Below are positions 1 to 55,009 of a stretch of 64,000 nt of DNA, in pieces. The first letter of the stretch is position 1; every line of letters starts with the position of its first letter. The notes under the pieces were generated by a model. The model had not been told where the DNA came from and searched no databases. It worked only from the letters and a program-made list of their open reading frames with translations. The stretch comes from Macrostomum lignano (Eukaryota). Position numbers and translations under genes: made by a program. The DNA is taken from NCBI GenBank assembly GCA_002269645.1, contig NIVC01000224.1, forward strand, positions 1 to 64,000, given 5' to 3'.

Positions 1-2630
1 AAGTGTCCCACAATATCGATGTGTACCGCCTCAAAGCGATTTGATGGTAGTGCGAAGGCCTGTTGCGGGGAGACAGTGTGGCGAGGTGACTTTACTCCGT
101 GGCAGTCCAGGCAGTTCCAGCAGTAGGTCTTGATGGACTTGCGCATTCCGAGCCAAAAATAACTTTGTGATAAGTTTTGCTGTTTTACGGAAGCCGAAAT
201 GACCAAGTCAATGAAAGGAAGCAATCACGGCGTCGCAGAGAGACGGCGGGATGATCGGGCGAGGATACGGCGTTGACGTCTCACACCAAACGACGACGTC
301 TTTGTCCAGAGAATACGATCGGATATTTGGTGCAGGTGAGAAGGTCGTTGTGCTTCAGCGATACTGGGCAGATCAACAGGGAATTTGACTTGATGGGGCA
401 GCGACTACAGCGGCTGTTGCGATGTTGGACACGTGATCATTCACTGGGAAGTCAGGCAGTCGAGAAAGGGCATCAGCTATTACGTTGTCTGCACGCGAAT
501 GTACTGGACATCTGCCACGTTCTCGGACAAGACGGTCAAGTAGCGCTGATTGCGATCTGATGTAGTGGTGCGATTGGCGTGGAAGGCCTGAGCTAGTGGT
601 TTATGATCAGTGAACAAGGTCACGCTCAGTCTTTCAATGAGGCTGCGGAAGTGCAACATTGCCAGGTACGCCGCGAGTAGTTCTCGGTCGAACGTGCTGT
701 ACGTCCTTTGAGATGATGACAACTTCTTGCTAAACACGCCAAGAGGTGACGTTCCGGTTGAAGAGGTTTGATGCAGAACGGCACCAACACAGTCGACTGA
801 GCCATCAGTGTACAGGTAGTACGCAGTACAGTTGGGGTCCAGATGATGCAGCAATAGTCTCTCTGAGAGAACTTGTTTGATGTTTTCGAAAGATTTCTGA
901 TGCTGCTCTATCCATTGGAAGTTTCTTGCTGACTGTAGTGATGCAGTGAGTAGGTCTTGCAGCGGACAGATGCGGTCAGCGAAGTTTGGAACGAATCGGC
1001 GGTAGAACCCAACGACGCCGAGGAAGCGCCGGAGTGCGTTCGTATCCGTGGGTGTCGGTCAGTCTGATTATTTGGATCTTCTTATTCCTTCAGGAGTCAC
1101 GCGGTGGCCAAGCAAATCTACCTCGGATTGAAAGAACTCGCATTTCTTCAAGTGAACTTGCAGTCCGTGTGTTTGTAGGCGGTCCAAAACCTGTTCCAAA
1201 TGCGAGTAGTGGTCTTCCGAGTCTTCGAGAATATCAGGACATCATCGATGTATGAGATGACGAATGTCAGTCCGTGAAGAACAGAGTCGATCAAGAAGCG
1301 TTGAAAAGTTTGTGCTGCATTCCTTAGACCGAAGGGCATGCATGTGCACTCGAACAATCCAAACGGTGTGGTGATGGCGGTTTAGCAGATCTCTTCTTCT
1401 GCGACTGGAATTTGATGAAACGCGCGAACAAGGTCTAACTTTGAAAACACAGTGCTTCCGTGTAGGTACCGAGTGAAGGTTTGAATATGTGGAACCGGAT
1501 AGTTGTCCGGCTTTGTTCGTTTGTTCAATTCGCGATAGTCAGCGCATGGACGCCAGCCAGCTTCCCTTGGGTGCCATGTGGAGGGGTGACGCCCAAGCGC
1601 TTGAGGAAGGTCTGAGGTAGCCGGCATCGATTAGCTGCTGAAACTCCTGCTTTGCAGCCTGCAGTTTTGCAGGGTGCAGTTGCCGGGGTCGCAAGTGAAC
1701 CGGTTGTCCACTACCAGTGTCTAGCCGGTGAACAGAGTCATGTTTGACCTCTGAAGCTGGCGGAAGGGCTCCGCCTTCAACGAAAGAAAAACAATCTGCA
1801 AACTTTGTTAACAGCGTACTCGTCGAGAATCCAGGTTGGGTGGCAGTTCTACCGACACAGTGAACGGGCCACAATGAACATTTGAAATTGACAAGGTAAC
1901 AGTAGACAGTCCTGTTTCTGAGTCTCGAACGTGTTTGCGCTGGCAATCGACGACTAACCCATGGTGAGCCAAGAAGTCGTAACCTACCTTATATGATGGG
2001 TTTTACAACTGAGGTCACGAGAAAGGTCCACTGGAAGGCTCGACGCAAACCGCGGATTGAGACATCCAGTAGGACCGACCCGCGAACTGGTATGGCGGCT
2101 CCAAGAGCAGTAATTAAACGAATGTTTGTATCTTGAACGAGTGCATTAACGAGTTGAGGTGGAACAATGGAAACCGAGGCTCTGGTATCCACAAGAAACT
2201 TGTTGTAGGTATTGTTGATTTTAACATCCAACTCCAAACAGGTGGTCGATGGTGTCTCGGCACTTCGCACCGCGACCTCGGTCGCAGTGCGACTTAGTTT
2301 TCCGGCTGTCGAGAAGGTGATGATGAATGCGACTGAGATGGTGTTTTTTCATTGGGATGCAGCACTCGAATCGGACGCGAGCTGTCCTTGGGAAACTGAC
2401 ACCAGGGGGCGACACGACCGAGCACGACGGCCATAGTAGAGGTGTGAGCGGCAAGCGACGGGGCATTGGCCAGGCTTAAATGAGTCTGTTCCAGCGGGCT
2501 TACCAGGTGCATGTCGGTGTGGAGCTTGCTCAACGCGCTGCTGGGATGCCCGGTCTGCACCGGTCTGATGATCGAATTGTTTCCACGCACGTGAAACCGT
2601 GTTGTGCGTCCGCGCTCCAGCCTTGCCCAT
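1..2630 (-). mobile_element. Ty3/Gypsy LTR retrotransposon (CsRn1/Kabuki-like clade), degenerate gag-pol, 5'-truncated, runs off the left edge
   Basis: Minus-strand order: gag C-terminus with CHCC motif (C-RS-H-LYYGRRARS-C-RPW-C across a C5 homopolymer frameshift); protease (FLVDTRASVS, G>R); RT (CADYRELN, FSKLDLVRAFHQI, MPFGLRNAAQTFQR, YIDD); RNase H (TDGS, DRELLA, TDHKPL); integrase start (CLDC, RFEAVHIDIVG at the edge). Multiple frameshifts and stops. Confidence 0.93.
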
Positions 2631-3498
2631 AACACTAATATAGACTGGCTGTATTATATATATATTATGGCAGGCTATGGCAGGCTAGAGCGTGCCGAAA
2701 CGAGGGTGAAACCAAAGATATTTGCCCGCGGCCGATGTCTATGGCCAAACCAAAAGGCACATATTCTTTATATTTATGCCTCTCTTTGAAAACAAGAGGC
2801 GAGTAAACAAGTAGAATTAATTTCCAGAATAACAGGGTCGTTCTCAAAATCAGGAATTACGCGATAAAACAAGAAAGAAAATTTTCGACCCTGAACCAGC
2901 CTTTCATGCAAAACAAGCAACAGGGTAAACGTAGCTGTTGAAAGAAAAGTACTTTATTTATCATTCGAAACAGTGAAATTGGTACGGTTGTCAAAGCAAC
3001 TGTCTACTGAGTCATTTTATCAATTTAATATTTCCATTTCTTCGATGTAACGCTAAGACGGTGTCATGTTTTGTGAAAAAATTCAATGGGAAAGAAACAT
3101 CAAAAATAAACAATTTTGCACAGGAAGGAAGAAAAGAACATTAGAATTTGCTTCTTATTAAAGAATGACTGCTTAGTGATTTGTTCCTTGACTTAAACAC
3201 AATCTTTCATCACTTAAACGCATGACTGTTCTAGTTACTAGCAGTTGAATTGTACAAATATATTGCTAGTTTTATAGGTGAAAGCAATGCATATGGCGTC
3301 TTTTTGGCGTTTTTTTGTGCCTTGTAATGTGATCTTTGTATTCGTGATGTTTTTATATGGATTAGTGCACCACAGTTGTTGCAATATTTTTTTATACAAT
3401 TAATTGCTACTAAGACAGGCACAAGCCAATAAACGTTGGGACCATAGTTTTGCAACACTGGAATAAGATAATGACCAAAAAAAGCAGTAGAGTGGAGA

Positions 3499-4199: not shown

Positions 4200-5174
4200 A
4201 ACTATACGGCGAAGTACCACAAAGAGGTACAGGCGGCGCACTTTGGCGACAAGGATCAGGTGGTACTTCATCAAGGCGTGGCCTACATGGCTGGACATCA
4301 ACCTTGCTCATTCGCAACGGTATCAGGAGAGAGGAGTAAGACGGCGGAGGCCATCGCCGCTCATCTACAACCAGTCCTTCGCCACTTTAAGGAGAAGCAC
4401 GATGTCGATAAGGACGCCTTTAGCCAACTGGACCAGATCGTCATCGTCTCTGATTCGCCATCCAGCCAGTATAGAAATCGCAAGATGGTTTTCTTATTCG
4501 ACCGCCTGATGAAGATCATGAGGGTGTCAAGCTGGCGTTGGATCTACACAGAGGCCGGACACGACAAGGGTGCTGCGGATGGAGTTGGAGCGGCTATCAA
4601 ACGCCGCTGCGATGAAGTCGTGGCTAGCCGGCAGGACGTTGTAACACCTCAGGATGTTATGGAAGCCGTCAGATCGGGTAGCCCTCTGCACATACTCACA
4701 TGGTTGGTTCAGCCAGAGGACATGAACTATTTCACAAGCATCATCACCTTCGTGGGTGAGGACCTCTGCGGCATGCCAGGCTCGAAGTCGATGCACGACG
4801 TCTCAAGGACTGATGGTGGGCCGATCACTTACCGTCAGCTGTCCTGCATGTGCCCTGATGCAGCAGTAGCCTGCCCATGCCACGAGATGAAAGTGTGGGC
4901 TCCGCTGATGCTGCCGGAGGCGCCAGCTCCTGATACTGCAACGAGTGGACTCGGATGTGGGCGTGGAGGTGGACGTGGACGCCGAGGTGGACGAGGACGC
5001 GGAGGTGGACGTGGACGCCGAGGTGGACGAGGACGCGGAGGTGGACGTGGACGTGCAAGTGGTGATGAAAAGGCGCTGCTCCCTTATGACTTTTGCAACG
5101 AACCTTTGGTAGCTCATCTCATCTCTCTAACTATCCTATATATCCTATATACTAAAAATGAAATCCTATCCTAA
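4200..5174 (+). pseudogene. Sola2-like transposase fragment, 5'-truncated, with an RGG-rich tail
   Basis: Open frame from 4200: NYTAKYHKEVQAAHF..QVVLHQGVAY, IVSDSPSSQYRN, EAGHDKGAADGVGAAIK. These match the ENY..EIQS.H / SD..xQYxN / GHGKGxxDG motifs of Sola2-type transposases. The upstream DF(S/A)E Asp is missing (TAA at 4197-4199). Confidence 0.78.
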
Positions 5175-9698: not shown

Positions 9699-12600
9699 AT
9701 GAAATCAGCCGCGAGCAGCAGCTCCGGGGCATCAGAGAGGCCCCGCTCAGCCGTGCGCCAGTTCTGTGGCTACACGACCGCCCACGGCCTGGGCCGCTTC
9801 TCCGAGCAGTCTACCTTTTTCGGCAGGCTCATCTGGGTCTCTTTTCTGCTGGGCACCTACGGCGGCTTTGTCTATCACCTGTACACCCTGTTCGACAGGT
9901 TTGCCCAGGCTCCTGTGCTCACCACAATGACCGTGTCCTCGCTGCCGTTCCAGTTCCCGGATGTGTACATCTGCCCGACGCAGGCGAACACCATGAGCAA
10001 GGCCATTAAGTCTCTGACCGAATTTGGAGTTACCGATACGGAGTTCCTTACCAAGAGGACCATCGACGAGAAGATTGGATTTTACGCTTTTGACATTAAA
10101 AACAGTGACTTCAACCAGATGACGATGGCACTGCTGAGCGTCCTGGAAAGCACAGAAGAGTCACTGATGGCGAAGTTTCAGTTTCCAGCACGTGGTGAGC
10201 ACTCTGCTATTTGAAAACTCTTTGCCAGAGCAGCATTCCATATATCTGAGCTCTTATCTGACAAAATCCCTATTCAAAATTTGAGCCATGAGAAACTTGC
10301 TTTAGGCTTTGAGGATATCGGGCTGCATAAGTTTTCCTCAAAAACATGTTAGAGAACCGAGCCGAGTGTCGGACAACGCTCTCAGGCGAGGAATACTCTG
10401 GCGACGTGAGTTCAGCAGTTGTCTACGGATTTGCCACCATGACAGTCACGTCTGTGAACACCTCGGCATTCGAGCCCAGTCCGTACAGAGCGCTTAGATC
10501 GTGCATACCATGGAATGATGCAGCTCGGATGCTGCATAGTACAAGCGCCAGCCTAGCCAACAGGCTGCTGTCACTCAAATTTTCCGACGACGAGTCCCGC
10601 TGTCGCTCGCCGCCCGGACTGCCGCTGTCTAAGCTTCTGCCGTTTGCATCTCGTGAGTCAAGAAAATTCAGAGATGAGAAAGTTCTAACAAAAAATAAAG
10701 CATCGCACGTTGCTGATTTTCCAGGACCAACGTTACAGCTTATCGACTGCTTCCCAAAAAAGACTGTGGATGCATTATTTCTTGTCTGCTCGGAGCTCCA
10801 AATCATCACTTATGAATCCTGCGCCGAATGCTGCGCCAGACTCCATTTCCCGTACGTGGCCCTCCAGCCCCTGTCGTGCCGATGCGGCTTCAGCATCAGC
10901 GGCATCAAGAATACGTCCGACACGTGCAACAGTTATTGCAAGAACGACAGCACAAGAGTTTGCGGCTCGGCTACTAGCGCTACGGTTCTGCAGATTCGGC
11001 ACAATGGTGAGTGAATCATTCAACCATGTAGGCCCGAGTTCGGAGAGCATCAGGAGGCATTTTAACCGACAGCTCAGATCCTATAAATCGTCTGTATTCG
11101 TCTAATTTCCTATTTCCTGTTTTTAGCATCAAAGGCGCTGCACATAGGAAACTTCAGCCAGTTGACGCCGCAGGCGCACGGGCCCTACTGCTTCTTTAGA
11201 GATGAGATTGGCAAGCTGAATGCCGGCTTCTGTGAAATCCCCTTTTGCCGAATTTGTAAGTCCAATCCGCCGCAGTGATGAACTTCATCGCCAAAGTCTC
11301 GAGAAAATTAGCTTCTAGGCTCAAACTGCTCACTTTTCAGCCAAATCTAAGACCTACGACTGTGCTGTGAGCTCATCAGACAAGCACGTAGAGCAGCTGA
11401 AGCTCTCTCGGTATACGGGATGGACGAATGTCACCGCCTCCGGCAGACGATGCATGCCTTGGAGTAAATTGCTGAGAATCGAGGAGCTGGTTAAAACGCG
11501 CAGTCAGTACCGCCTGATTTACTTGAAGCTCTCACAATCTAGCAAAAATGCATTCTCAGCTTGAATTCCTACCTTCATGCAGTATTCGCCCTGGCTGAGG
11601 CTTTGAAAAATATCTACATCCGAGTTCCCGACGAAATCGAGAACAGCGAGGACAACTTCTGCCGCTCAGCGAGCATTGTGGTCGACTCCGTCCCAAGTTG
11701 GGATGAAACTATGATAATGTGAGTTCAAAACTGAGTTCGTGACAAATCTTTGCACGAGTATGAGTTCCAAGCTTTAAATAAACAGACCAATAAAGCTTTT
11801 CTTCCATCTCAGGCGGCACAGCGTCTTTAGCTCAAGCGTGCCAATTTGCATCCCGGAAGACTTTCTCGTCGGACTGGCGACACCGCAGATTATGGGTTTC
11901 GTCTCATTTTTCGAATTGTCGGTAGAGACCTGCGATATACCGAAGTGCTGTGAGTTTTGAGCCTTTTAGAGAAAAAACTGTAAGACAGCTAATGACTGTT
12001 TGAATTTAATCGGCATTTTTAGACACCACTGCCCCCAGCGTGACTAGCGCTATCAGCGATTCGGTTGGCAGACACCTGCTGGCTCGCCAGTTCGGCAGCG
12101 ACCTCGGTGTCAGCCTCGTTGAGTGCAGCTTTGCTGGCCAGAAGTGCACCAAGGAAGACTTTGTGAACTTCGCCCACCCGCAGCTGGGCATGTGTCACCA
12201 GTTTCTCAAGCAGCGCTTCACCGCCAACATGAGCAGCACGCAGTTGGCAGAGAGCCAGCTGTCAGTCAAGTACTTCACGGACTCGACAGACGCAAAGGGA
12301 CAGACGTTGTCAAATATTGACAAGCTGACGCGGGTGGTGCGAGGAGGCCGCAGTGCTGATGCCAGACAGACAGCATTCAAGGTGAGTCTTTGACGGCTGC
12401 TTACGCTTACTTTCACACTGAACAATGCTCACTCTCACACTGAACAATGCTCACACTCACACTGAACAATGTTCACACTCACACTGAACAATGCACACAC
12501 TCACACTGAACAATGCTCACTCTCACACTGAACTATTCTCACACTCACACTGAGCAATATTCGCTCTCACACTGAGCAATATTCGCTCTCACACTGAGCA

Positions 12601-14484
12601 ATATTCGCTCTCACACTGAGCAATATTCGCTCTCACACTGAGCAATATTCGCTCTCACACTGAGCAATATTCGCTCTCACACTGAGCAATATTCGCTCTC
12701 ACACTGAGCAATATTCGCTCTCACACTGAGCAATATTCGCTCTCACACTGAGCAATATTCGCTCTCACACTGAGCAATATTCGCTCTCACACTGAGCAAT
12801 ATTCGCTCTCACACTGAGCAATACTCGCTCTCACACTGAGCAATATTCGCTCTCACACTGAGCAATATTCGCTCTCACACTGAGCAATATTCGCTCTCAC
12901 ACTGAGCAATATTCGCTCTCACACTGAGCAATATTCGCTCTCACACTGAGCAATATTCGCTCTCACACTGAGCAATATTCGCTCTCACACTGAGCAATAT
13001 TCGCTCTCACACTGAGCAATATTCGCTCTCACACTGAGCAATATTCGCTCTCACACTGAGCAATCATCCGAGCCTCCATTGCGAACTTGAAGGCCGTCAT
13101 CGTACCGGAGGGATCCTTCCCATGGGCTTCAAAGAGCATTGACGTGGCCACGGCTCAGCGCATGGACGTGCAGCTTAGCTTGAACAAGTACTCGAAACTG
13201 TCCAGCGCATCCAGGCCCTGCATGGAGACCACAGAACCTGTCACATATCGACTGCCGTCCTGGAACATGCCACCATCGAATGAAAATTTCAAGTACTAAT
13301 CTGTATCCTGCTTTTGGGAATTAACCTGTGCTAATCTGTGCTAATATCGTTATTACGCTATGAATTCATTTACTAATACTATAACCTTGGCTCCAGAATC
13401 GATTGGGCCGCAAATAGGATTATTTCAACCAGCGGCTGGACACGGAAACTGTCGATGCTGCGCGAGACGCTGCTCAACAACAGCGGCCCAAGGTTAGTAG
13501 TGCCAGCAGGTGAAGTGCTCCTGAAGTTATTCTTAACTGCGGAAATTGTCACAACAAACGAAAAGTACTTCGCGATTTCAGCATCCTGACCGATGCGGGC
13601 CGCCTGTTTGACGTCCCCGATCGAGGCGATTGCGTCAACACCTACGTCGTGCGGGCCTTTCTCAACAACTGCAGATGCCTGCCGTCGATTCTGCCCATCA
13701 AAGCCGAGCTGCTCGCCAATTTCAGTTACTGCTTCAACATCAAGGATGCTGATAACATTTCTGACGACACCGAGAGGTGCTACATTGATCAAATGTCCCG
13801 GATTACTCAATATCAATATGAGGCTACAAAACTCTGCAAGCCCCTGTGCAGCACCTTCGAATACACCAGCCGCTTCATCCCCTACACCTGGCCTAACCTG
13901 CATTTCATGCAGTCGCTCGAGTTCCTGCGGCAGCTGGCTTCCGACTTGGGCTACCGGCACAACATCAGCCGGCTGAAGGGTGTCTCCAGCCTGTACTATG
14001 CATATCTGAGGGCTCAGAGACTCGCAGACACGCCAGTTAGCAAAATCAGCAGCGTCGAGTCTCAGAGATTTGATGTGGAGCTGACGGCGCTGGAAAACCG
14101 GCTGGCTCAGCTGACCGTCCAGGCTGAGCGGCCCTTCGGCCAGGAGGTCTCGGAGGAGCCGGCCTACCCCGCCAAGAACCTCCTGGCCGACATTGGAGGT
14201 GAGAAATCATTTTGAGTGGTTTTGGTATCGGCAGCGCGAATTCAGTCAGTTTTCAATCGGATTGCCTTTCAGGCGCCCTGGGTCTCTGGTCCGGCATCTC
14301 CATTCTCACTGTCTGCGAGTTGCTGGAGCTCTTCATCTACCTGGGGCAGGAGCTGGTCCTGAGGATGCGGCGACAGCCCTCCAAGGGGCAGCCAGGAGAC
14401 AACAACGAGCCTGACTTACCATCTAAGGTAGAGATGGAGTCGGAGATGAACGCGGTTGAGAATGAAAAAGTCACTCATTTTTGA
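9699..14484 (+). CDS. DEG/ENaC (amiloride-sensitive) channel subunit with kringle-WSC-kringle insertion; 12 exons, 1041 aa
   Basis: Exons 9699-10194, 10353-10652, 10725-11006, 11127-11255, 11341-11502, 11583-11718, 11813-11949, 12023-12381, 13093-13292, 13397-13492, 13582-14198, 14273-14484 (3126 nt; all GT-AG and phase-consistent). Motifs: TTAHG gating motif, TM1, FPDVYIC, ECSFAGQKC..DF..LGMCHQF, thumb cysteines (NNCRC, LCKPLC), LLADIGGALGLWSGISILTVCELLE (TM2 with GxS filter). Confidence 0.93.
12415..13065. repeat. 22-bp minisatellite filling ENaC intron 8
   Basis: Unit TCACACTGAGCAATATTCGCTC, ~28 near-identical copies, degenerate at the 5' end. Confidence 0.95.
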
Positions 14485-15593
14485 TTGAAGAGAAATCCTT
14501 GCTGAAATTCTGCTTGAGATTCCGAGAAGGCTGCAGTGTTGGGGGCAGTCCATGCACGGACAAATGAAGTAGAAGAACGCTGCACTTCTCCACCGTAGCG
14601 TAGCCACAAACACTTTGATGCTTGCTTTATTCACTATCCAAAATTCCACAAGCCGATAAAATGTCTTAGCGCTTAGTGCTGAAAATCTGGTGTTTTTTAC
14701 CTCACTGAATGCGTTTTTGTGCCTGCAGCCTGCAGTGACAGTTGCTTTATTTTGCAGCGCCCTTCCACTTAGGAACAGACCGTGAACGAATGTTAAACTG
14801 GATCGCAGATTGCTTATTTAATCGGTGAAAGGCAAAATGGACTGCAGTTTAGCTGATTGGCTTGCAGGCCCTTCGCTTCAGTGATTTTTGCTAATTCGCG
14901 TGCGGGAATCGCTGATATTACACAATTATATTATAACCTTATCACATTATGATACTATACATTAATCCTTTATGATATTCTCCGCTCACTACATTATATC
15001 ATTATTGCATTAATCAAATTATTAAATGATGATATTATCACATAACAAGATCATCATATAATACCTTACCTTTTTGCTTAAACGCTACCCTACCTAACAC
15101 TGACCTTGCAATTTTCACATAATTTAATACGAGTTTCATTAAAAGTGCCGAAATCCGCGTGCTTTGTCAACACTAATATTTTTCTTCAGCAGTCCGTAGA
15201 ATGAATGAAACACGAATAAAAAACTGCTTTGCCTCCATTTCACAGATTATTTTGTTATTGCATTGCAAGTATATAATCCTAGTCATTCGAAAAAATCTTT
15301 TTAAGCTGACATTAAAAAAGTTTTTTAAAAATTGATGCAGCGACAAAGCTGAGCTGCTGAGCAAATTTTTTCGAATTAAAAATTGTTCAAAAATTTTGCT
15401 TCCATTTGTTTTCGTCTTCAACAGCAACCAGAAAAGTTGCTGTGATGGTCAAAATAGGCAGCTGTGAAGCATTCTGGAACCCCGGATCCTGGAAACAACA
15501 ACAAGAAACTGCAAATTACGAAGCCCCGCATGCAAGGTCACAGTTAGAGCAGGAGGCGTCAGATGGCGCGCCACAGAGCCTTAATTAGAGCTG

Positions 15594-18520
15594 ACGAAGT
15601 CCGCCCCGTTGGCAGTGTCGGGCGCCCCGGCGTCGCGTAGGAGGCAGTTCCCGTATCGACGGGTTCGGGCCTGACCCCGCCTGAGCGGGCCCTGCAGGCT
15701 GAGCAGCAGGACGTCCTGAACAGGTTGGGGGCAGCATCCCTCGGCCCGGATCACGTGGCCCGCCAGTTGAAGTCGCCGCCGGCACAGGATGATGGACGGG
15801 CGCTGCAGCTTGGCCCGATCATACAGGGCCTCGTCAGCTCGAAAGGCCGCAGAGAGCAGCTCTGAGTGCGCCGAGTCCAGCTGCCGCTCCAGTGCAGCAG
15901 TCAGCGTCCACGTCTCGGCGTTGTAGAGCAGGACGGTTTCGACCACCGCCTGCCACAGCCGAGCCCTCTGGCGGTGGGGCAGCGCTTCGGACTGGACGAC
16001 GGCCCGGATCGAACGGAAGGCCGCCCAGGCAACTCCTCTGCGCCGCCGGAGGTCTTCGTCCACGTGGGGCACCAGACCGCCGAGGTAGGTGAACCGCTGG
16101 CAGCGTGCGAGCCTGGTCGTCTGCCGTCTGCGCCGCGGTATGTCAGGTCCGCTGGGATGTCGGCCGGCACAGTCAGCACCTCGGTCTTCAGCGTGTTGAC
16201 AACCAGTCCGACGCTCGATGCCATCTCGACGAACCTATCGATCTGGCGCTGGGCACCTTCAATAGACGAGGACAGGAGGGCGAGGTCGTCGGCGTAGCCA
16301 AGCACGCTCAGGCGCTTTTCGCCGTGGCGACGACCGATGCGTTTGCGCAGCAGGAAGCCGTCGTCAGCCGAGGGGAGTGCGGTCCGAAGCACCCAGTCCA
16401 GCAGCAGCACGAAGAGGAACGGCGCCAAGGTGTCTCCCCGCAGAACTCCTGATGAAGTGTCGAACAGGTCAGACAGGCCGTCCGCCGTCACCACAGCAGC
16501 TCGAGTATCGCAATACAGCTCCATGACAGCGTCGATTAGCTGCTGTGGGACCCGGTAGGCTTGAAGGACAAAGGGAGGCGCGGCTCTCAACACTGAGTCA
16601 AACGCCTTTCGAAAGTCAACGAAGACAATGATCAGCGTAGACTGGCGGATGCGCGCCTCCTCGATGACACGGAAGAGTGCGAGGATCTGTGTCACTGTAC
16701 CGGGTTGCGGCCGGAATCCGTTCTGCTCGTACCGCCAGCACCGACTGCAAACGATCGAGCAGCAGCCGGTTGAATAGCTTCGCGGTGCAGGGCATCAGCG
16801 AGATCTCGCGGTGGTCTTCTTTCCGCGTTGTCCCTACCTTCTTCGGGATCGGCACGATGTGGGCGACGGTCCACTCGGTGGGCGCGGGGGCGCCGGCGAG
16901 CACGCGGTTTATGACGCCTGTGACCTGGGAGGCCACACAGCGGAGCCGCAGCGCTTCGACCGGGACTTCGTCGGGGGCGAGCGCCTTGGCGCCTAATGTT
17001 TTCCGAGAGAACAGCACAACGTCCTCCGTGGTGGCTGGGCTGGTGCAGAAGTCCTCCTCAGCTGGGAGCGGCGTGTCCAGTGGGAGCGCAAAACTGGCAG
17101 GCAGCGGCGACGCGACGCGTTCACGTCGGGGCCGGCTGCAGTGATGGACCGGATGGCGTCGTCGACAGCGGCTTGCTGCCGCTCATTTAGAAGGCTTTCA
17201 AATGCGTCTTAAGCGTCCCCCGTGGGCCGCCGGATTCTGCGGAGTCGCTCGATGTTGAGCCGCGCCTGCCTGATGGTCGGGTCGCTCTGCCAGACAGGTA
17301 GCGATTTCTGCGCTGGCCGCATCAGCGGGACCGTCTGCTGATGTCGGAAAACTCCGCCTCGCGCTGATCTCCAAGCGCGCCGATGAAGGCGGCTGCGAAT
17401 TGACGCTTCACGCGGGTGTCCAACAGTGCGCGATAGTAGCGCCGTGACCGTGCTTTGGCGGTCGGTAGAGCTGGTCGTGAAGCTGCAAGTCGCAGAGCAG
17501 GAGTCGCTGGTCTGACCGGAGAGCCAGCGGAGCCATGGTGTCGCAGTTGGTGACGCGGCGGCGCATGGTCGAGTTGCGCCTTTCTTCTCGTGGCGTTTTG
17601 CCCGCGTGCGTTCCGTCGCCTTCTTTTGCAGCCCACAAAGGTGATCAGGCGGGCAGGGGGCTTGCAGAACTGGGTGTTTGCGGACACCAGGTCCAGCCGG
17701 TCAAGCAGGTCCTCCAGCGCATCGGTGTTGGCGTTCTCGCCTCCCGCGACAAAGGGCGAGCGCTCGGACCTCCGCGGAACTGAGTTCACGTCTCCGATCA
17801 CTGCCAGCATGTCGCGGTTAGGCACCTCTTCCAGCTGCAAAGTCGAAGTCGTGAAGTCGAAGAAGGCACGAGCCTCCTCGGGGTGAGCAGCGGTGGATGC
17901 ATACGCGTAAAACAGCCGGATGCAGCGGGCGCGCAGTCGCGGGGACAGCGAGATGCAGTGCACGCTCTGCCGAAGGCGCGGTCCGATCAGCACGCCGACA
18001 CCGCCCCGACCGCGGTCGTCTGCCGACGTGTACAGGTGGCTCCAGCCGGCTTCGAGGTCCTCAGAGTGGAGCCCCGGCTCAGCCACGATAGAAACCTCCT
18101 GCAGCATGATGAGGTCCGGCTGTGGGTCGTGGGCCAGCTGGACAAGAATGATGCGACGCCAGGAGGCCTTCAGAGTTCGGCAGTTCATCGTGCCGAGCCT
18201 GAGGCGGCCACCTGGTACAGCTGGGGCCAGATGGAGGTTGGCCTCATGGTCCCCGGCGCCACCCGGCGAATCCATAGTTGAGGTAGCAGGGACTGGGGAC
18301 AACAGGCGCCTGGCCGCGCCACGGAGTCGCCCTCGCCGGTTGCGCTCGCGCCGCCGCTCAGTGTGACGTTGCGCGCTGCGCTGACCTCTGCGAGTCCCTG
18401 CTGTGCTGAGCTTTGCTGCCGCAGCCGAAGCGCGGCCGTCCGAGCCAACCGAGGTCATCCGCGGCCTGATGATCTGGCCGCAATACCAGGAGGTGTCAGC
18501 ACTATTTGCACGGGTGTGCA
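15594..18520 (-). mobile_element. RTE-clade non-LTR retrotransposon (APE endonuclease + RT), frameshifted
   Basis: Endonuclease: RLGTMNCRTL, IMLQEV, GRGGVGVLI, VIGDVNS. RT: WTVAHIVPIPKK, HREISL, VDFRKAFDSV, GVLRGDTLAPFLF, GYADDLALL. RTE-type C-terminus: WAAFRSI, YNAETWTLT. Split over several frames; GC-rich relative to flanks; no 3' tail or TSD found. Confidence 0.9.
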
Positions 18521-18825
18521 AATAAAATAACTCTGCAAATAAAATGGCTCTGCAAATAAAATGGCTGGAAACAATATTTTTGATTTTTTGTCACTAACTC
18601 AAATTAGCCCTTCTTACACCTTGCTCGTGGAAAATCACTATTAGCCCTACTTTGAGTGGCTTGCATGGTCATCTTGCAGTGTTTAGTTTCAGATCGGAGA
18701 TTGTAGTTTTGGCCGATATCCGGGAATCACTGGTCTATTCGGAATCACAGAGTTCTGAAACAATTCAGACCACCGATGCTACCGTCCAACATGAAAGGAT
18801 CGAGTCAATTCTGAGTCAAGTAAGG

Positions 18826-37622: not shown

Positions 37623-37679
37623 TTAGTCTGCCAATTATCACAAGCCTGAGAGTCTGAGTGTCGCCCTTCTCTAATCCTG

Positions 37680-39290
37680 CAAACTATCCCACCAAGAACC
37701 GTCCTCCAACACCATCAAGAACCGCTTTCCAATCCCATCAAGAACCGCCCCCCAACCTCATCAAGAACCGCCCCCAACCCCATCAAGAACCGCCCCCAAC
37801 CCCATCAAGAACCGCCTTCCAACCCCATCAAGAACCGCAAGAACCGCCCCCAATCCCATCTTGAACCGCCCCCAACCCCATCAAGAACCGCCCCCCAACC
37901 CCATCAAGAACCGCCCCCAACCCCATCAAGAACCGCCTTCCAACCCCATCAAGAACCGCCCCCAACCCCATCAAGAACCGCCCCCAATCCCATCTTGAAC
38001 CGCCCCCAACCCCATCAAGAACCGCCCCCCCAACCCCATCAAGAACCGCCCCCCAACCCCATCAAGAACCGCCCCCCAACCCCATCAAGAACCCCCCCCC
38101 AACCTCATCAAGAACCGCCCCCAACCCATCAAGAACCGCCCCCAACCCCATCAAGAACCGCCCCCAACCCCATCAAGAACCGCCCCCAACCCCATCAAGA
38201 ACCGCCCCCAACCCCATCAAGAACCGCCTTCCAACCCCATCAAGAACCGCCCCCAACCCCATCAAGAACCGCCCCCAACCCCATCAAGAACCGCCCCCAA
38301 CCCCATCAAGAACCGCCTTCCAACCCCATCAAGAACCGCCCCCAACCCCATCAAGAACCGCCCCCAATCCCATCTTGAACCGCCCCCAACCCCATCAAGA
38401 ACCGCCCCCCCCAACCCCATCAAGAACCGCCCCCCCCAACCCCATCAAGAACCGCCCCCCAACCCCATCAAGAACCCCCCCCCCAACCTCATCAAGAACC
38501 GCCCCCAACCCCATCAAGAACCGCCCCCAACCCCATCAAGAACCGCCTTCCAACCCCATCAAGAACCGCCCCCAACCCCATCAAGAACCGCCCCCAATCC
38601 CATCTTGAACCGCCCCCAACCCCATCAAGAACCGCCCCCCAACCCCATCAAGAACCGCCCCCAACCCCATCAAGAACCGCCTTCCAACCCCATCAAGAAC
38701 CGCCCCCAACCCCATCAAGAACCGCCCCAATCCCATCTTGAACCGCCCCCAACCCCATCAAGAACCGCCCCCCCAACCCCATCAAGAACCGCCCCCCAAC
38801 CCCATCAAGAACCGCCCCCAACCCCATCAAGAACCGCCTTCCAACCCCATCAAGAACCGCCCCCAACCCCATCAAGAACCGCCCCCAATCCCATCTTGAA
38901 CCGCCCCCAACCCCATCAAGAACCGCCCCCCAACCCCATCAAGAACCGCCCCCAACCCCATCAAGAACCGCCTTCCAACCCCATCAAGAACCGCCCCCAA
39001 CCCCATCAAGAACCGCCCCCAATCCCATCTTGAACCGCCCCAACCCCATCAAGAACCGCCCCCCCAACCCCATCAAGAACCGCCCCCCCAACCCCATCAA
39101 GAACCGCCCCCCAACCCCATCAAGAACCCCCCCCCCAACCTCATCAAGAACCGCCCCAACCCCATCAAGAACCGCCCCCAACCCCATCAAGAACCGCCCC
39201 CAACCCCATCAAGAACCGCCCCCAACCCCATCAAGAACCGCCCCCAACCCCATCAAGAACCGCCCCCAACCTTATCAAGAACCGCCTTCC
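37680..39290. repeat. 21-bp C-rich minisatellite directly downstream of the MTERF stop codon
   Basis: Unit CCCCAACCCCATCAAGAACCG. Confidence 0.95.
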
Positions 39291-39499
39291 AATTTTTTGG
39301 CATTTGTTTAGAGTTGAGCTGTAACTTTTACGACTTGTATCTAAGCCAGTTTTAATACTAACGAAACTTAAATGCACATCCTTAGGGAAATAAAAGTTCA
39401 ATTACTTCATATTTTGCTATTTAAATTAGTCGCAAAATACGTAAAAGTACGTTTGCTATCGTTGTTTTATCTTAATTATTTTCAATATTTCTAGGCATA

Positions 39500-41380: not shown

Positions 41381-43128
41381 ATGACGTCCGTGGTTCGATT
41401 TCTCTTGGTGTCACTGCTGATTGGTAAGCAAAATCACAAGCTTTGATTACTTAAAGCTGATATGTAGTAGTCAGTTAATTGCTATTAATAAGAAGTTTAA
41501 AAAATTCGTTTTAATAATCATTACATGCAATCTGGGTTGTATCTAAGTATCAATGATTTGCATCTAGATCAAATCTAATCATCAATGATTTGCATCTAGA
41601 TCAAATCTAAGTATCAATGATTTGCATCTAGATCAAATCTAATCATCAATGATTTGCATCTAGATCAAATCTAATCATCAATGATTGCATCTAGAACAAA
41701 TCTAAGTATCAATGATTTGCATCTAGATCAAATCTAATCATCAATGATTTGCATCTAGATCAAATCTAATCATCAATGATTTGCATCTAGATCAAATCTA
41801 ATCATCAATGATTTGCATCTAGATCAAATCTAATCATCAATGATTTGCATCTAGATCAAATCTAATCATCAATGATTTGCATCTAGATCAAATCTAATCA
41901 TCAATGATTTGCATCTAGATCAAATCTAATCATCAATGATTTGCATCTAGATCAAATCTAATCATCAATGATTTGCATCTAGATCAAATCTAATCATCAA
42001 TGATTTGCATCTAGATCAAATCTAATCATCAATGATTTGCATCTAGATCAAATCTAATCATCAATGATTTGCATCTAGATCAAATCTAATCATCAATGAT
42101 TTGCATCTAGATCAAATCTAATCATCAATGATTTGCATCTAGATCAAATCTAATCATCAATGATTTGCATCTAGATCAAATCTAATCATCAATGATTTGC
42201 ATCTAGATCAAATCTAATCATCAATGATTTGCATCTAGATCAAATCTAATCATCAATGATTTGCATCTAGATCAAATCTAATCATCAATGATTTGCATCT
42301 AGATCAAATCTAATCATCAATGATTTGCATCTAGATCAAATCTAATCATCAATGATTTGCATCTAGATCAAATCTAAGTATCAATGATTTGCATCTAGAT
42401 CAAATCTAATCATCAATGATTTGCATCTAGATCAAATCTAATCATCAATGATTTGCATCTAGATCAAATCTAATCATCAATGATTTGCATCTAGATCAAA
42501 TCTAATCATCAATGATTGCATCTAGAACAAATCTGATCTGAATAGAATGGATTGCTAATCTTTAGGATGAAGGAATAGAATGGATTTCTAATCTATAGGA
42601 TAAAGGAATAGAATGGATTGCTAATCCATTATTGTTAATGAAGAAATAGAATGGATTGCTAATCTATAGGATGAAGGAATAGAATGGATTGCTAATCTAT
42701 ATGATGAAGAAATAGAATGGATTGCTAATCTATAGGATGAAGGAATAGAATGGATTGCTAATCTATATGATGAAGAAATAGAATGGATTGCTAATCTATA
42801 GGATGAAGGAATAGAATGGATTGCTAATCTATATGATGAAGGAATAAAAAGGATCGCTAATCTAAGCTACCATTTGGTGTAAGAAAATCCCAATTAGCAC
42901 CTAAGGAGTGTCAAACTTGCTGTCGTGTCTTCCCCATCAACCCCTCCTTCATCCGGCTGCAGCCTCTCTGCCTCATCAGTGCAGCTCAAACCCGGACGCC
43001 AAGCGTCTCTTCGACGACCTGCTGAGCAAGGCTGACTACAATAAGCTCATTCGGCCGGTTAACAACAACTCCAGGACTCTCACAGTGTATCTCGGGCTGA
43101 AACTGTCTCAGCTGATTGACGTGGTGAG

Positions 43129-43225
<97 letters not shown>

Positions 43226-52152: not shown

Positions 52153-52579
52153 GATTCGAGACGGGTATTGAATTTGCGAGTGTAGTTTCATACCTGTAGC
52201 TTCTGTTTATTCTGTTTATAGCTGTTTGTTTAGCAATTCAACTCGTACTAATAACTGAATGTTTTGCATATTGTAATGCGTAATTTATGATTAAACAAGC
52301 TGTTGAAACCCGCGGATTTTGAACCCGGGGAATTCCAATCCCGGAACTATTTTTCCATGTTTTCTGAAATCTGAGGCCATACTCAAACAAAAACTTTTTA
52401 ATAGTTAGTAGGATAGAGATAGACATCAAATGGAGTACATTTGTGTAAAATTAGAATTTGAGTCAAACATTGATCTTGTTGGTTGGGTTGCTTTTTACTT
52501 TAAATAGGCAGTTAATGTCTGTCTGACTCTAAAACATGTATCGGCAAACTCTGGCCTCTGCCTCTGACTCTCCCTACGT

Positions 52580-53820: not shown

Positions 53821-55009
53821 AACTGCCCCTCAGCCATAAGCAGGATTCTTTTCTGGCCTTTGAGGTAAAAGTCTGCCCATTCCTGCTTGGAAAGCCAGTT
53901 TTTGGGACGTAGTACTCTCATGGCTGTTCTCATGCTTTGATCATGTCATCTTTCTTGCCAATTTGCAAGCCCTGAAAAGAATTTGTGTATCTTCTGCTCC
54001 ACTGCAGTCTGCATCAGTCTAACAACCAAGGAAATACGCATTTCTTAGGAGGCCATTTAAATTTTAAAGTTACCTTATGCGAATCTTAATGTTAAAATTT
54101 TCATGGTGTAACTAATTTAGTAGGATTGCATTGTAATCAGTTATTCATTAATTTTTCGCTATTTTTTTAAACCATCCCACATTGCCTTGATTTGCCATCC
54201 TTGTTTAACTGCTTCGACTTGTCTATACAGAGGACAGTAAGTTTGAATCTCTCGCTAAACTCTCTCCTCTCAACGCCTCTCCACTCGCGGGGGTACAGAG
54301 AAGGCTATTAAAAAGTTATTCCAAAACACTGTACACTCGCTATGTACATTGAGCCCTATCGCCTGACCCTTCGTCTGGCTCTGGGGGAATGAGTGAGTGA
54401 GTGGCACAAACAACAGAAAAAGCAGACAAACTTCACATGCTTACAGTTTCTTTTTCGGTTGAGTTACTTAGTTGAAACTTTACATTTAGATAGAGAATAA
54501 GTCAATGAAAAATTGTGTCAAGTTTGAAGTCAATCGCTTTACGTGGAGCAAACTTATGGCAGCTGAAAGTTAGTCAATTTTGAAACCCTTTTACGCATCG
54601 GCCCAGATCGGGAAAGAGAAGCAGGCGGGCGGAGGTTGGGGTGGTTGCTACGCTGAAAAAAACAGCCTAACTTTAAAAGTGCACAGCACCGCTCAGGATT
54701 ATTTTTGAGACTCGAAATTTTACATGATTGTGCCAAAATAGTTGAAGATTGTCTGTGCCAAATTTGAAGAGAATCGGTAAAAGTGGAGCGGCGCTATGGA
54801 GGATTTAGTGAAAAAATTGCGCATTTTGAGCAGTTTTTTGTACTTTTAGGTAGGAAGACTTGAGTCTAGGAAGTTAAAAGGTAGCCTAAGACATTCTCTG
54901 TAGTAAGTTTAGGGTGGGTGTACAGTTTGGTGTAATTTGGTTGAGCGGTTTGGGAGTCCATAGCGATCAAAATTGTCCACAGACACACAGAGTTTTCATT
55001 TTTATACTT

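What the first reader, a model, noticed from the sequence alone, without database searches (positions are those of the whole stretch)
9699..14484. DEG/ENaC channel carrying a kringle-WSC-kringle sensor module in its finger region
Six exons (10353-11949, 382 codons) lie between the FPDVYIC region and the CSFxGxxC strand, where DEG/ENaCs have their variable, ligand/protease-regulated finger domain. They encode kringle 1 (ECRTTLSGEEYSG..RSCIPW..RCRSP / GPYCF..FCEIPFC), a WSC domain (DCF..ESCAECC..YVAL..SCRCG..TCNSYCKND..VCG) and kringle 2 (YDC..YTGWTNVTASGRRCMPW..DNFCRS..PIC..ETCDIPKC). The HG motif, TM1, thumb cysteines and GxS filter are intact, so this looks like a functional 1041-aa subunit. 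Kringle + WSC otherwise co-occur in Kremen receptors, and WSC domains bind glycans in fungal sensors. The channel might therefore be gated by a protein or glycan ligand, or tethered to extracellular matrix for mechanosensation. I know of no characterised channel with this architecture but cannot search to confirm.
Basis: partly seen in the sequence, partly recalled or inferred. Interest (0 to 1): 0.92.

Follow-up and report, generated by a model that had tools for sequence, protein, structure and literature searches.

The report
Flatworm sodium channel with kringle–WSC insert
This is an intact flatworm gene for a DEG/ENaC-type ion channel whose outer 'finger' region carries about 380 extra residues built from adhesion-type modules (a WSC domain nested in one kringle, then a second kringle); the layout is conserved and transcribed in Macrostomum lignano, appears in no paper I could find, and its function is untested.

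Summary

- **Domain calls.** Pfam finds ASC (132 bits) and WSC (above cut-off). The two kringles fall below Pfam's cut-off. As family profiles, each matches canonical kringles end to end (hhalign 97.5%, all six Cys in register).
- **Nesting.** The WSC exon sits inside kringle 1, between Cys3 and Cys4.
- **Position.** The 382-codon insert lies between FPDVYIC and CSFAGQKC, in the finger domain.
- **Single mRNA.** M. lignano GenBank gene models are purely RNA-seq-derived. At least four paralogue groups there carry the same insert inside the ASC reading frame. The closest one (58% identity) shares all 11 intron positions.
- **Selection.** All 21 aligned insert cysteines are invariant at 34-60% identity.
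- **Distribution.** An exhaustive HMM search of 1.84 billion cluster representatives found the whole module only in M. lignano. No paper links degenerins to WSC or kringle domains.

This is a real, lineage-restricted variant of a known channel family. Ligand, matrix or force sensing through the insert is inference only. An insert-skipping isoform (exon 1 to exon 8 keeps the frame) is not excluded.

The parts
9699..10194 (+). Exon 1: start codon, cytoplasmic N-terminus with the HG motif (TTAHGLGRF), TM1, post-TM1 strand FPDVYIC, and the N-terminal part of the finger. Ends in phase 1.
   Evidence: Pfam ASC. Aligns to FaNaC 7yvb residues 60-163.
10353..10652 (+). Exon 2 (300 nt, phase 1-1): N-terminal two thirds of kringle 1. 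Holds Cys1 (C171), G-E-E-Y-S-G, Cys2 (C216, C-I-P-W), a conserved helical stretch WNDAARML...LANRLL, Cys3 (C249, C-R-S-P) and PGLPLS.
   Evidence: It is the most conserved part of the insert (71% identity to Mlig006056) and the highest-pLDDT part of the model.
10653..10724 (+). Intron 2: 72 nt, GT..AG, open and in frame. If retained it would add 24 residues between kringle 1 and the WSC.
   Evidence: The orthologous M. lignano intron is 82 nt, not a multiple of 3, so it must be spliced.
10725..11006 (+). Exon 3 (282 nt, phase 1-1): WSC domain with 10 cysteines (C274-C345), nested in the Cys3-Cys4 loop of kringle 1.
   Evidence: Pfam WSC 36.2 bits against a cut-off of 27.8. Profile hits to yeast Wsc1 7pz2 (E=1.4e-9) and Kremen-1 (E~1e-6). 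Foldseek 7pz2 prob 1.00.
11127..11255 (+). Exon 4 (129 nt, phase 1-1): C-terminal third of kringle 1. Holds G-P-Y-C (Cys4, C381), Cys5 (C395) and C-E-I-P-F-C (Cys6, C400).
   Evidence: Aligns to the C-terminal end of the Kremen kringle, SPWCY...YCEIPAC.
11341..11949 (+). Exons 5-7 (11341-11502, 11583-11718, 11813-11949; 162+136+137 nt) with introns 5 and 6. They encode kringle 2, which is loop-expanded: Y-D-C (C410), Y-T-G, C-M-P-W (C440), D-N-F-C-R (C483), V-P-I-C (C514), and C-D-I-P-K-C (C542, C547).
   Evidence: Pfam Kringle 27.7-32.4 bits, below the cut-off of 34.3. hhalign against canonical kringles 97.6%. tPA kringle 2 hit E=2.5e-4.
12023..12381 (+). Exon 8: return to the channel core. 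Helix SVGRHLLARQFG (equivalent to the last finger helix), strand with CSFAGQKC, then the HPQLGMCHQF region. Enters in phase 1, so it is frame-compatible with exon 1.
   Evidence: aligns to FaNaC 196-237. 80% identity to Mlig006056.
12413..13064 (.). 22-bp minisatellite (29.6 copies, 97% matches) that fills most of intron 8 (12382-13092).
13093..13492 (+). Exons 9 (13093-13292) and 10 (13397-13492) with intron 9: central extracellular domain. The exon 9 acceptor has a weak polypyrimidine tract, but the junction AFK|AVIVP matches the M. lignano transcript.
13582..14198 (+). Exon 11: thumb cysteines (CVNTYVVRAFLNNCRCLP, CKPLC), the palm, and the pre-TM2 segment with the degenerin position (A968 in LLADIGG).
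   Evidence: Pfam ASC best stretch 781-991..
14273..14484 (+). Exon 12: TM2 with the G-I-S selectivity-filter motif (GLWSGISILTVCELLE), cytoplasmic C-terminus, and stop codon at 14482-14484.

Best explanation
The locus is an intact gene for a DEG/ENaC channel subunit. It belongs to a subfamily so far seen only in macrostomid flatworms.

In this subfamily a module of about 380 residues and 22 cysteines lies in the finger domain, between the first finger helices and the last finger helix that precedes the C-x-F-x-G-x-x-C strand. The module has three parts: (i) a kringle, (ii) a WSC domain nested in that kringle's Cys3-Cys4 loop, and (iii) a second kringle with expanded loops.

Origin (inferred). 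The exons involved are phase 1-1 (exons 2, 3, 4 and 5 singly, exons 6+7 jointly) and sit in a phase-1 position. This points to acquisition by exon shuffling, with the WSC exon dropped into the intra-kringle intron. It would have happened once, before the family expanded.

Shown:
- The reading frame and splice structure.
- The domain identities. WSC is firm; the kringles rest on profile evidence.
- The position of the insert in the finger.
- Conservation under purifying selection.
- Inclusion of the insert in mature mRNA in M. lignano.
- Restriction to this lineage in public protein data.

Inferred function. In the trimer the module would place three disulfide-rich binding arms on the top and periphery of the extracellular domain. 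FaNaC binds its peptide there, ENaC's GRIP tract acts there, and ASIC's acidic pocket involves the same domain. The most likely role is a built-in extracellular binding domain, for a glycoconjugate, a matrix component or a partner protein, that regulates or anchors the channel through the finger. The well-conserved kringle 1 would act as the scaffold docked on the channel. The fast-evolving WSC would be the exposed, paralogue-specific binding surface.
For: - Gene model: 12 exons, all GT..AG, 1041 aa.
- Pfam: ASC 132 bits and WSC above cut-off.
- hhalign: both kringle profiles against 18 Pfam-verified kringles gave 97.5% and 97.6% with all six Cys aligned. The gap in kringle 1 falls exactly at the WSC site.
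- Structure: the AF2 model of the orthologue's insert has pLDDT 71 and pTM 0.69. Its Foldseek hits are Kremen 5fwt (prob 0.99, 220 columns) and Wsc1 7pz2 (prob 1.00).
- Position: the family profile aligns to FaNaC 60-163 before the insert and 196-237 after it.
- Same architecture in M. lignano: Mlig006056g1-3 (58% identity, 99% coverage), Mlig007204/028168 (34%), Mlig026586/034226 and Mlig013355/006398.
- Those models are purely RNA-seq/transcriptome-derived (PMC5730564).
- All 11 intron positions and phases coincide with Mlig006056g1.
- All 21 aligned insert cysteines are invariant across paralogues at 34-60% identity. The window's 22nd, C337, is not.
- Recent M. lignano duplicates g1 and g2: insert pN/pS 0.12 (2 nonsynonymous, 5 synonymous changes) against 0.48 for the rest (13 and 8).
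- Region identities to the orthologue: kringle-1 N-part 71%, WSC 39%, kringle 2 46%, core 59-80%.
- Exhaustive hmmsearch of 1.84e9 representatives: whole-module hits and ASC-bearing hits come only from M. lignano.
Against: - There is no transcript or expression evidence from the window's own organism.
- Exon 1 and exon 8 are both phase 1, so an insert-less isoform would stay in frame and cannot be excluded.
- The kringle calls fail Pfam's gathering score on the single sequence.
- No stand-alone kringle structure matched the AF2 model.
- The kringle-2 part of the model is of modest confidence.
- The full-length model failed (pLDDT 33), so how the insert packs on the channel is unknown.
- The canonical kringle lysine-binding residues are absent (read from the sequence).
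- No member of the family has been recorded electrophysiologically. Three other M. lignano DEG/ENaCs gave no currents with the peptides tried (PMC9234716). C. elegans EGAS channels, the other DEG/ENaCs with an accessory domain, gave no currents in oocytes (PMC10424705).
- The selection test on recent duplicates rests on very few substitutions.
Confidence: 0.8

Rival explanations
1. The insert has no external ligand. It is an internal regulatory or biogenesis element: an autoinhibitory or stabilising cap on the finger and thumb (like ENaC's GRIP domain but not protease-released), or a module that governs folding, trafficking or subunit-specific assembly.
For: - The part nearest the channel in sequence (kringle-1 N-part, with the WNDAAR...LPLSEF motifs) is the most conserved (71%) and the most confidently modelled. 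That fits an intramolecular interface.
- ENaC shows that a finger insertion can act purely in cis (PMC6197857).
- The canonical kringle lysine-binding residues are missing.
Against: - WSC and kringle domains are, in every characterised case, binding modules for external partners (Kremen-Dkk/LRP6, Wsc1-cell wall, plasminogen-fibrin; established knowledge).
- The WSC evolves fast between paralogues (26-41% identity) while keeping its cysteines. That fits diversifying binding surfaces better than a fixed internal plug.
- No conserved furin-type sites flank the insert.
Confidence: 0.3
2. The insert is an alternatively spliced cassette. A conventional channel (exon 1 joined to exon 8, about 659 aa) is the main or co-expressed product, and the long form is a minor or tissue-specific isoform.
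For: - Exon 1 ends and exon 8 begins in phase 1, and exons 2-7 total 1146 nt, so skipping keeps the frame.
- Exons 2, 3, 4 and 5 are each symmetric 1-1 and could be skipped singly.
- One M. lignano model (P0008) lacks the exon-4 equivalent.
- GenBank submission removed some alternative transcripts.
Against: - All transcript-derived full-length M. lignano models include the whole insert.
- The insert is under constraint at least as strong as the core.
- P0008 comes from an older, non-transcript-only annotation.
- This rival does not contradict the main explanation. It only adds isoforms.
Confidence: 0.2
3. Gene-model artefact. Exons 2-7 belong to a separate secreted kringle/WSC gene nested in a large intron of an ordinary ASC gene, or the locus is a decaying pseudogene.
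For: - No RNA data exist for this organism.
- An ATG lies just upstream of exon 2 (10346).
Against: - That ATG gives no signal peptide, and exon 7 has no in-frame stop.
- All six exons keep the ASC frame.
- The same arrangement is found in at least four transcript-derived paralogue groups, with identical intron positions.
- No frameshift or stop occurs in any of the 12 exons.
- The cysteine framework is invariant.
Confidence: 0.03

Closest known systems
FMRFamide-gated sodium channels (FaNaC) and neighbouring spiralian DEG/ENaC branches
   Same: They are the best-scoring solved structures for the channel core (7yvb E=9.5e-18; 8on7 E=4.2e-16). They share the HG motif, two TMs, the thumb cysteines and the G-x-S filter. 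In FaNaC the finger is the ligand-binding site.
   Different: FaNaC has about 30 residues where this protein has about 460 between the aligned blocks. FaNaC has no kringle or WSC. Peptide gating is untested here. The M. lignano genes tested by Dandamudi et al. are other genes.
[quoted passage not shown]
   Same: It is a lineage-specific extra domain inserted in the finger. It is disulfide-stapled, peripheral, and controls gating through the finger and thumb (PMC6197857).
   Different: GRIP lies between finger helices alpha1 and alpha2. It is a small beta-sheet of about 80 residues and works by protease release of an inhibitory tract. The insert here precedes the last finger helix, is about 380 residues of recognisable adhesion-type domains, and has no conserved furin-type sites at its borders.
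Kremen-1/2 ectodomain (kringle-WSC-CUB, Dickkopf/LRP6 co-receptor)
   Same: It is the only well-known protein family that combines a kringle and a WSC. It is the top Foldseek hit (5fwt prob 0.99, 220 columns). Profile hits cover both its WSC and the end of its kringle.
   Different: In Kremen the domains are in series (KR, then WSC, then CUB) on a single-pass receptor. Here the WSC is nested inside the kringle, a second kringle follows, there is no CUB, and the host is an ion channel. TM-scores are low (0.14-0.22), so the inter-domain geometry differs.
Yeast Wsc1 cell-wall integrity sensor (WSC / cysteine-rich mechanosensor domain)
   Same: It is the best sequence and structure match for the WSC exon (7pz2: profile E=1.4e-9; Foldseek prob 1.00, TMt 0.45). 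In Wsc1 the domain is the extracellular head of a force sensor.
   Different: The fungal sensor is a single-pass protein with a Ser/Thr-rich spring and signals through Rom2/Rho1. It is not a channel. The WSC here has 10 cysteines, not 8.
DEG/ENaCs with extra extracellular modules: C. elegans EGAS-1..4 (EGF plus ASC) and the nematode degenerin-specific extracellular regions of MEC-4/MEC-10
   Same: They are a precedent for accessory cysteine-rich extracellular modules on DEG/ENaC subunits (EGAS naming in PMC10424705). MEC-4-type channels are the classic candidates for tether-gated mechanotransduction (established knowledge).
   Different: The domain types differ (EGF or nematode-specific cysteine-rich regions), and I did not check their positions. 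EGAS channels are functionally uncharacterised and gave no currents in oocytes.

Membership tests
DEG/ENaC (Pfam ASC, PF00858) | Significant match to the ASC profile over the N-terminal, central and C-terminal blocks | tested here: met
   132.3 bits against a cut-off of 23.6, in 3 stretches split by the insert. PDB hits to FaNaC, ASIC, ENaC and PPK.
DEG/ENaC (Pfam ASC, PF00858) | Topology and signature motifs: cytoplasmic HG motif, TM1, post-TM1 FPxxxxC, CxFxGxxC strand, thumb cysteine ladder, small residue at the degenerin position, G/S-x-S filter in TM2 | tested here: met
   HG 29-30, FPDVYIC 86-92, CSFAGQKC 582-589, C783...C797-x-C799, CKPLC 851-855, A968 in LLADIGG, G-I-S 979-981. Motif identities are from established knowledge of ASIC/MEC-4.
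DEG/ENaC (Pfam ASC, PF00858) | Forms a trimeric, amiloride-sensitive, Na+-selective channel | not testable with these tools
   Needs heterologous expression and electrophysiology.
WSC domain (PF01822) | Profile match above the curated threshold | tested here: met
   29.5 bits in the whole protein and 36.2 bits for exon 3 alone, against 27.8.
WSC domain (PF01822) | Conserved cysteine framework and fold like solved WSC domains | tested here: met
   Nine of the 10 WSC cysteines are invariant across paralogues. 7pz2 profile E=1.4e-9 and Kremen E~1e-6. Foldseek 7pz2 prob 1.00, TMt 0.45 on a model with pLDDT 75-83 in this region.
WSC domain (PF01822) | Carbohydrate or cell-wall binding | not testable with these tools
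   Needs a glycan array or binding assays.
Kringle domain (PF00051) | Profile match above the curated threshold | tested here: not met
   Kringle 2: 25.9-32.4 bits against 34.3, covering only profile positions 8-59. Kringle 1 with the WSC excised: 14.1 bits, E=0.06.
Kringle domain (PF00051) | Six cysteines in the kringle spacing with the G-x-x-Y-x-G, C-x-x-W, C-R-x-P, P-x-C and C-x-I-P-x-C motifs, aligning end to end with bona fide kringles | tested here: met
   hhalign of family profiles against 18 Pfam-verified kringles: 97.5% (E=4.9e-12, columns 1-87/87) and 97.6% (E=3.1e-12, columns 6-87). PDB profile hits to tPA K2, HGF and ROR1/2. UniProt labels some members 'Kringle domain-containing'.
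Kringle domain (PF00051) | Triple-disulfide kringle fold in three dimensions | tested here: inconclusive
   In the AF2 insert model the kringle-1 N-part has pLDDT 82-94, but kringle 2 is mostly 50-80. Foldseek gave no stand-alone kringle hit. Kringles matched only through the Kremen KR+WSC alignment.
Kringle domain (PF00051) | Lysine-binding site (acidic pair after C-R-N-P; aromatic residues around Cys4) | tested here: not met
   Read from the sequence. Kringle 1 has P-P-G-L-P-L followed by the WSC insertion at that loop. Kringle 2 has S-A-S-I-V-V and V-P-I-C. Many natural kringles also lack this site.
Kremen receptors | Serial KR-WSC-CUB ectodomain on a single-pass membrane protein | tested here: not met
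   No CUB in the Pfam scan. The WSC is nested in the kringle rather than following it. The host protein is a two-TM channel.
ENaC-type GRIP domain | Insertion between finger helices alpha1 and alpha2, with protease-released inhibitory tracts | tested here: not met
   The insert directly precedes the helix that aligns with the last finger helix and the CxFxGxxC strand. No conserved R-x-x-R or dibasic sites lie at its borders. There is no sequence similarity to ENaC in this region.

The most novel reading that the evidence does not exclude
The channel is a self-contained 'adhesion-gated' or tether-gated DEG/ENaC. The WSC/kringle arms bind a glycan or matrix component (cuticle-like surface coat, basal lamina, mucus, or a partner cell). 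Ligand engagement or force transmitted through that bond moves the finger and opens or closes the pore. This would be the first DEG/ENaC in which the extracellular tether or ligand receptor is part of the pore-forming subunit. The different WSC surfaces of the paralogues would tune what each channel senses.
Probability: 0.15. Interest if true: 0.88.

Novelty: new variant of a known kind. Interest (0 to 1): 0.62.

Why it matters
How DEG/ENaC channels couple extracellular events to the gate is a long-standing question. The events include peptides, protons, proteases and, most contentiously, mechanical force through extracellular tethers. In all well-studied cases the finger domain is the variable input device.

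Here evolution has spliced a recognisable binding module into that exact position. One of its parts is a WSC domain, the same domain type that heads the yeast cell-wall force sensor. The arrangement has been kept under selection through an expansion into at least six paralogue groups.

That gives a natural experiment. The same core can be compared with and without a defined extracellular module, in an animal (M. lignano) that has RNAi and transgenesis. It is also a clean example of exon shuffling producing a domain nested within a domain nested within a channel domain. If the insert only aids folding or assembly, the finding stays a curiosity of flatworm channel evolution.

Tried and rejected
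1. Remote tools refuse spliced window sequences. The exhaustive search and both structure predictions therefore used the M. lignano orthologue and paralogues, not the window protein.
2. The word-indexed homologue search with the insert profile returned only 2 M. lignano proteins. It was superseded by the exhaustive search.
3. The full-length AF2 model of Mlig006056g1 with 9 sequences failed (pLDDT 32.9, pTM 0.24). I drew no conclusion from it on how the insert packs on the channel, or on which finger helices flank it.
4. Intron mapping of the most divergent paralogue (P0005 on L002) was not possible because the locus was not exported to the sandbox. A single origin of the insert is therefore inferred from the shared nested layout and from the one orthologue mapped.
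5. I looked for expression data on family members in a paper's supplements and by gene id in full text. Nothing was found.
6. I tried to place the organism with the neighbouring nicotinic-receptor exon. It is 79% identical to M. lignano and 80-81% to unnamed contigs, so it is uninformative. It shows only that the window is not M. lignano itself.
7. I considered a Kremen-derived origin of the module. The domain order differs (nested rather than serial), so insertion of a WSC exon into an intra-kringle intron is the simpler account.
8. I considered GRIP-like protease regulation. No conserved basic cleavage motifs flank the insert.
9. dN/dS between the window gene and its orthologue was not attempted, because synonymous sites would be saturated at 58% protein identity. 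I used the recent M. lignano duplicates instead. The counts there are small.

Full report
**1. What is in the sequence**

The region is eukaryotic, with short GT..AG introns. I rebuilt the gene from three-frame translations and splice sites.

- It has 12 exons on the + strand, 9699-14484.
- Exons 2-7 (10353-11949) total 1146 nt = 382 codons.
- Exons 2, 3, 4 and 5 are each a multiple of three and phase 1-1. Exons 6 and 7 together are 273 nt. Exon 1 ends and exon 8 begins in phase 1.
- The whole insert is therefore a symmetric phase-1 block. This is the classic signature of shuffled extracellular modules. It also means that skipping the block would keep the frame.
- Intron 2 (72 nt) is open and in frame.
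- Intron 8 is filled by a 22-bp minisatellite of about 30 copies.
- tblastn of the model against the window finds no second copy.

**2. Domain identities**

*Pfam on the window protein.*
- ASC scores 132 bits (cut-off 23.6).
- WSC scores 29.5 bits in the whole protein and 36.2 bits for exon 3 alone (cut-off 27.8).
- Kringle scores only 25.9-32.4 bits (cut-off 34.3), covers only part of the profile, and is found only for kringle 2.
- Kringle 1 with the WSC excised scores 14 bits.
- On single-sequence evidence, ASC and WSC are firm and the kringles are not.

*Profile test of the kringles.* I built family profiles from the window protein and its M. lignano relatives. I compared them with 18 kringles taken from multi-kringle proteins, all 18 of which are confirmed as Pfam Kringle.
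- Kringle 1 without the WSC aligns to kringle columns 1-87 of 87 at 97.5% probability (E=4.9e-12).
- Kringle 2 aligns to columns 6-87 at 97.6% (E=3.1e-12).
- All six cysteines and the G-x-x-Y-x-G, C-x-x-W, C-R-x-P, P-x-C and C-x-I-P-x-C motifs are in register.
- In kringle 1 the alignment gap falls exactly where the WSC exon was removed, between C-R-S-P-P-G and G-P-Y-C. The WSC is therefore nested in the Cys3-Cys4 loop of kringle 1.

*Other support.*
- Against PDB sequences, the insert profile hits yeast Wsc1 (7pz2, E=1.4e-9), the Kremen-1 WSC (about 1e-6), tPA kringle 2 (2.5e-4), and HGF and ROR kringles.
- An AlphaFold2 model of the orthologue's insert (9-sequence alignment) reached pLDDT 71 and pTM 0.69. 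It is best in the kringle-1 N-part and the WSC.
- Its top Foldseek hits are the Kremen ectodomain (5fwt, prob 0.99, 220 aligned columns) and the Wsc1 sensor domain (7pz2, prob 1.00). No stand-alone kringle structure matched.
- The kringles are thus well supported by sequence profiles and cysteine pattern. They are loop-expanded, and their fold is not independently confirmed.
- The canonical lysine-binding residues are absent in both (read from the sequence).
- The insert has 22 cysteines (6+10+6) and six N-x-S/T sequons, as expected for an extracellular segment.

**3. Where the insert sits**

- The family profile aligns to Aplysia FaNaC (7yvb) residues 60-163 before the insert. This covers the HG motif, TM1 and FPxVxxC.
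- It aligns to FaNaC residues 196-237 immediately after the insert. This covers the helix equivalent to SVGRHLLARQFG and the C-x-F-x-G-x-x-C strand.
- FaNaC has about 30 residues where this family has about 460. That interval is the finger domain.
- I could not fix which finger helices flank the insert, because the full-length model failed (pLDDT 33).
- For comparison, ENaC's GRIP domain lies between finger helices alpha1 and alpha2 (PMC6197857).

**4. Is it one gene and one mRNA?**

- The only homologues found are M. lignano proteins with the same layout. The closest is Mlig006056g1: 1049 aa, 58% identity, 99% coverage, precomputed Pfam WSC+ASC.
- The GenBank annotation of that assembly (GCA_002269645.1) is not ab initio. 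It is the RNA-seq-derived transcriptome Mlig_RNA_3_7_DV1 (StringTie, TACO, a de novo assembly, and experimentally defined transcript ends) with TransDecoder ORFs (PMC5730564).
- Transcript-derived models with the full insert exist for at least four paralogue groups: Mlig006056g1-3, Mlig007204g1/028168g1, Mlig026586g1/034226g1 and Mlig013355g1/006398g1.
- I mapped Mlig006056g1 back on its locus. All 11 introns of my window model have counterparts at the same alignment positions, within 0-2 columns. That includes the weak exon-9 acceptor.
- The orthologous intron 2 is 82 nt, so it has to be spliced.
- A separate nested gene is excluded. There is no signal peptide or stop within exons 2-7, the frame is continuous with the channel, and the module has co-duplicated with the channel many times.

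**5. Selection**

- In the alignment of the window protein with six paralogues (34-60% identity), all 21 aligned insert cysteines are invariant.
- Identity to the orthologue is 71% for the kringle-1 N-part, 60% for its C-part, 46% for kringle 2, 39% for the WSC, and 59-80% for the channel core.
- Between the recent M. lignano duplicates g1 and g2, the insert has 2 nonsynonymous and 5 synonymous differences (pN/pS 0.12). The rest of the gene has 13 and 8 (0.48).
- The counts are small, but the insert is clearly not decaying.
- The pattern suggests a conserved kringle 1 acting as a scaffold and a fast-evolving, cysteine-locked WSC acting as an exposed, diversifying surface. This is inference.

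**6. Distribution and prior knowledge**

- I ran an exhaustive HMMER search with the insert profile against 1.84 billion cluster representatives. It gave 1679 hits at E<=0.001.
- Every protein that matches the module as one stretch is from M. lignano.
- A local HMM search showed that the only ASC-bearing proteins among the 150 listed hits are also from M. lignano.
- The remaining listed hits are multi-WSC or multi-kringle repeat proteins.
- Limit: only the best 150 were listed. A channel elsewhere carrying a single WSC or a single kringle could have been missed. Flatworm genomes without protein predictions are not covered.
- The window's own protein is not in the databases, so the window comes from another species. 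A neighbouring nicotinic-receptor exon did not resolve which.
- No paper in the library combines degenerin with 'WSC domain'. None links kringles to DEG/ENaC.
- Papers mentioning Macrostomum and degenerins concern other genes. Dandamudi et al. tested Mlig049925.g2, Mlig051885.g1 and Mlig041003.g1.
- UniProt auto-labels the M. lignano entries 'WSC domain-containing' or 'Kringle domain-containing'. The architecture therefore sits in databases but is undescribed.
- C. elegans EGAS channels ('EGF plus ASC') are a precedent for accessory domains on this family. They remain uncharacterised (PMC10424705).

**7. How it most likely works**

- *Shown.* This is an intact DEG/ENaC subunit with a conserved, transcribed, extracellular kringle(WSC)-kringle module in the finger.
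- *Inferred origin.* The module was acquired once by exon shuffling into a phase-1 intron, with a WSC exon inserted into the intra-kringle intron.
- *Inferred function.* In the trimer, three such modules project from the top and periphery. That is where FaNaC binds its peptide and where ENaC's GRIP tract acts, and ASIC's acidic pocket involves the same domain. Both domain types are binding modules wherever they have been studied. The most likely function is a built-in receptor or anchor for a glycoconjugate, matrix component or partner protein, one that modulates or tethers the gate through the finger.
- *Rivals.* The module could be a purely cis-acting cap or assembly element (about 0.3). It could be an optional spliced cassette, which is compatible with the main view (about 0.2). 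It could be an annotation artefact or pseudogene (about 0.03).

**8. Verdict**

- The structural interpretation and the novelty claim are supported. The 'sensor' function is untested.
- It is a new variant of a known kind: a DEG/ENaC subfamily with a new, nested accessory module, restricted so far to macrostomid flatworms.
- Interest is about 0.6. A channel specialist would find it surprising, and it could make the tether or ligand question experimentally tractable in M. lignano. It rests on inference for function and on transcript evidence from a sister species.

Noticed in passing
window 10653-10724: Intron 2 of the channel gene is 72 nt, stop-free and in frame with exons 2 and 3, so retention would add 24 residues between kringle 1 and the WSC. 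One older M. lignano model (P0002) carries an extra ~21-residue stretch at exactly this junction, which looks like a retained intron.
   Followed up: partly
window 12413-13064: A 22-bp minisatellite (TCACACTGAGCAATATTCGCTC, 29.6 copies, 97% matches) fills intron 8. It makes intron 8 (711 nt) by far the longest intron of the gene. The M. lignano orthologue's equivalent intron is 78 nt.
   Followed up: partly
window ~483-2650 (- strand): Fragments of an LTR/Gypsy-like retrotransposon pol (protease, reverse transcriptase, RNase H), broken across frames.
   Followed up: no
window ~15584-18590 (- strand): A LINE-like element in a GC-rich patch (GC 0.64): a 422-aa ORF with an endonuclease-like region (17325-18590) and reverse-transcriptase ORFs (15904-17182). 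It lies about 1 kb downstream of the channel gene.
   Followed up: no
window ~42905-49750 (+ strand): A Cys-loop receptor gene, nicotinic acetylcholine receptor-like. Exons encode the ligand-binding domain ([25 protein letters not shown]) and TM1-TM3. The exon is 79-81% identical to nAChR subunits of M. lignano and many other animals.
   Followed up: partly
window 59083-59427 (- strand): An ORF with a fibrinogen-related domain signature (VDGSVSFNWNWAEYASGFGQGESLNYWMGLEQLHQLT).
   Followed up: no
window 37650-39350; 51100-52200; 52500-53900; 54890-56850: Several large tandem-repeat arrays that stay open in several frames. Examples are a proline-rich unit (PNPIKNRPQPHQEPPPTPSRTA) and a unit TQVSLLSQMYTGLPSIPDVHRSPFYPR. 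They are probably satellite DNA rather than coding sequence.
   Followed up: no
window 4200-5171 (+ strand): A 324-aa stop-free segment of unknown identity, next to a low-complexity repeat. It may be transposon-derived.
   Followed up: no
L001 10437-10466; L003 6208-6237 (M. lignano): The M. lignano orthologue has a 13th exon that encodes the last 10 residues after a ~1.5-1.7 kb intron. The window gene ends within exon 12. The C-terminal tails are not conserved.
   Followed up: no
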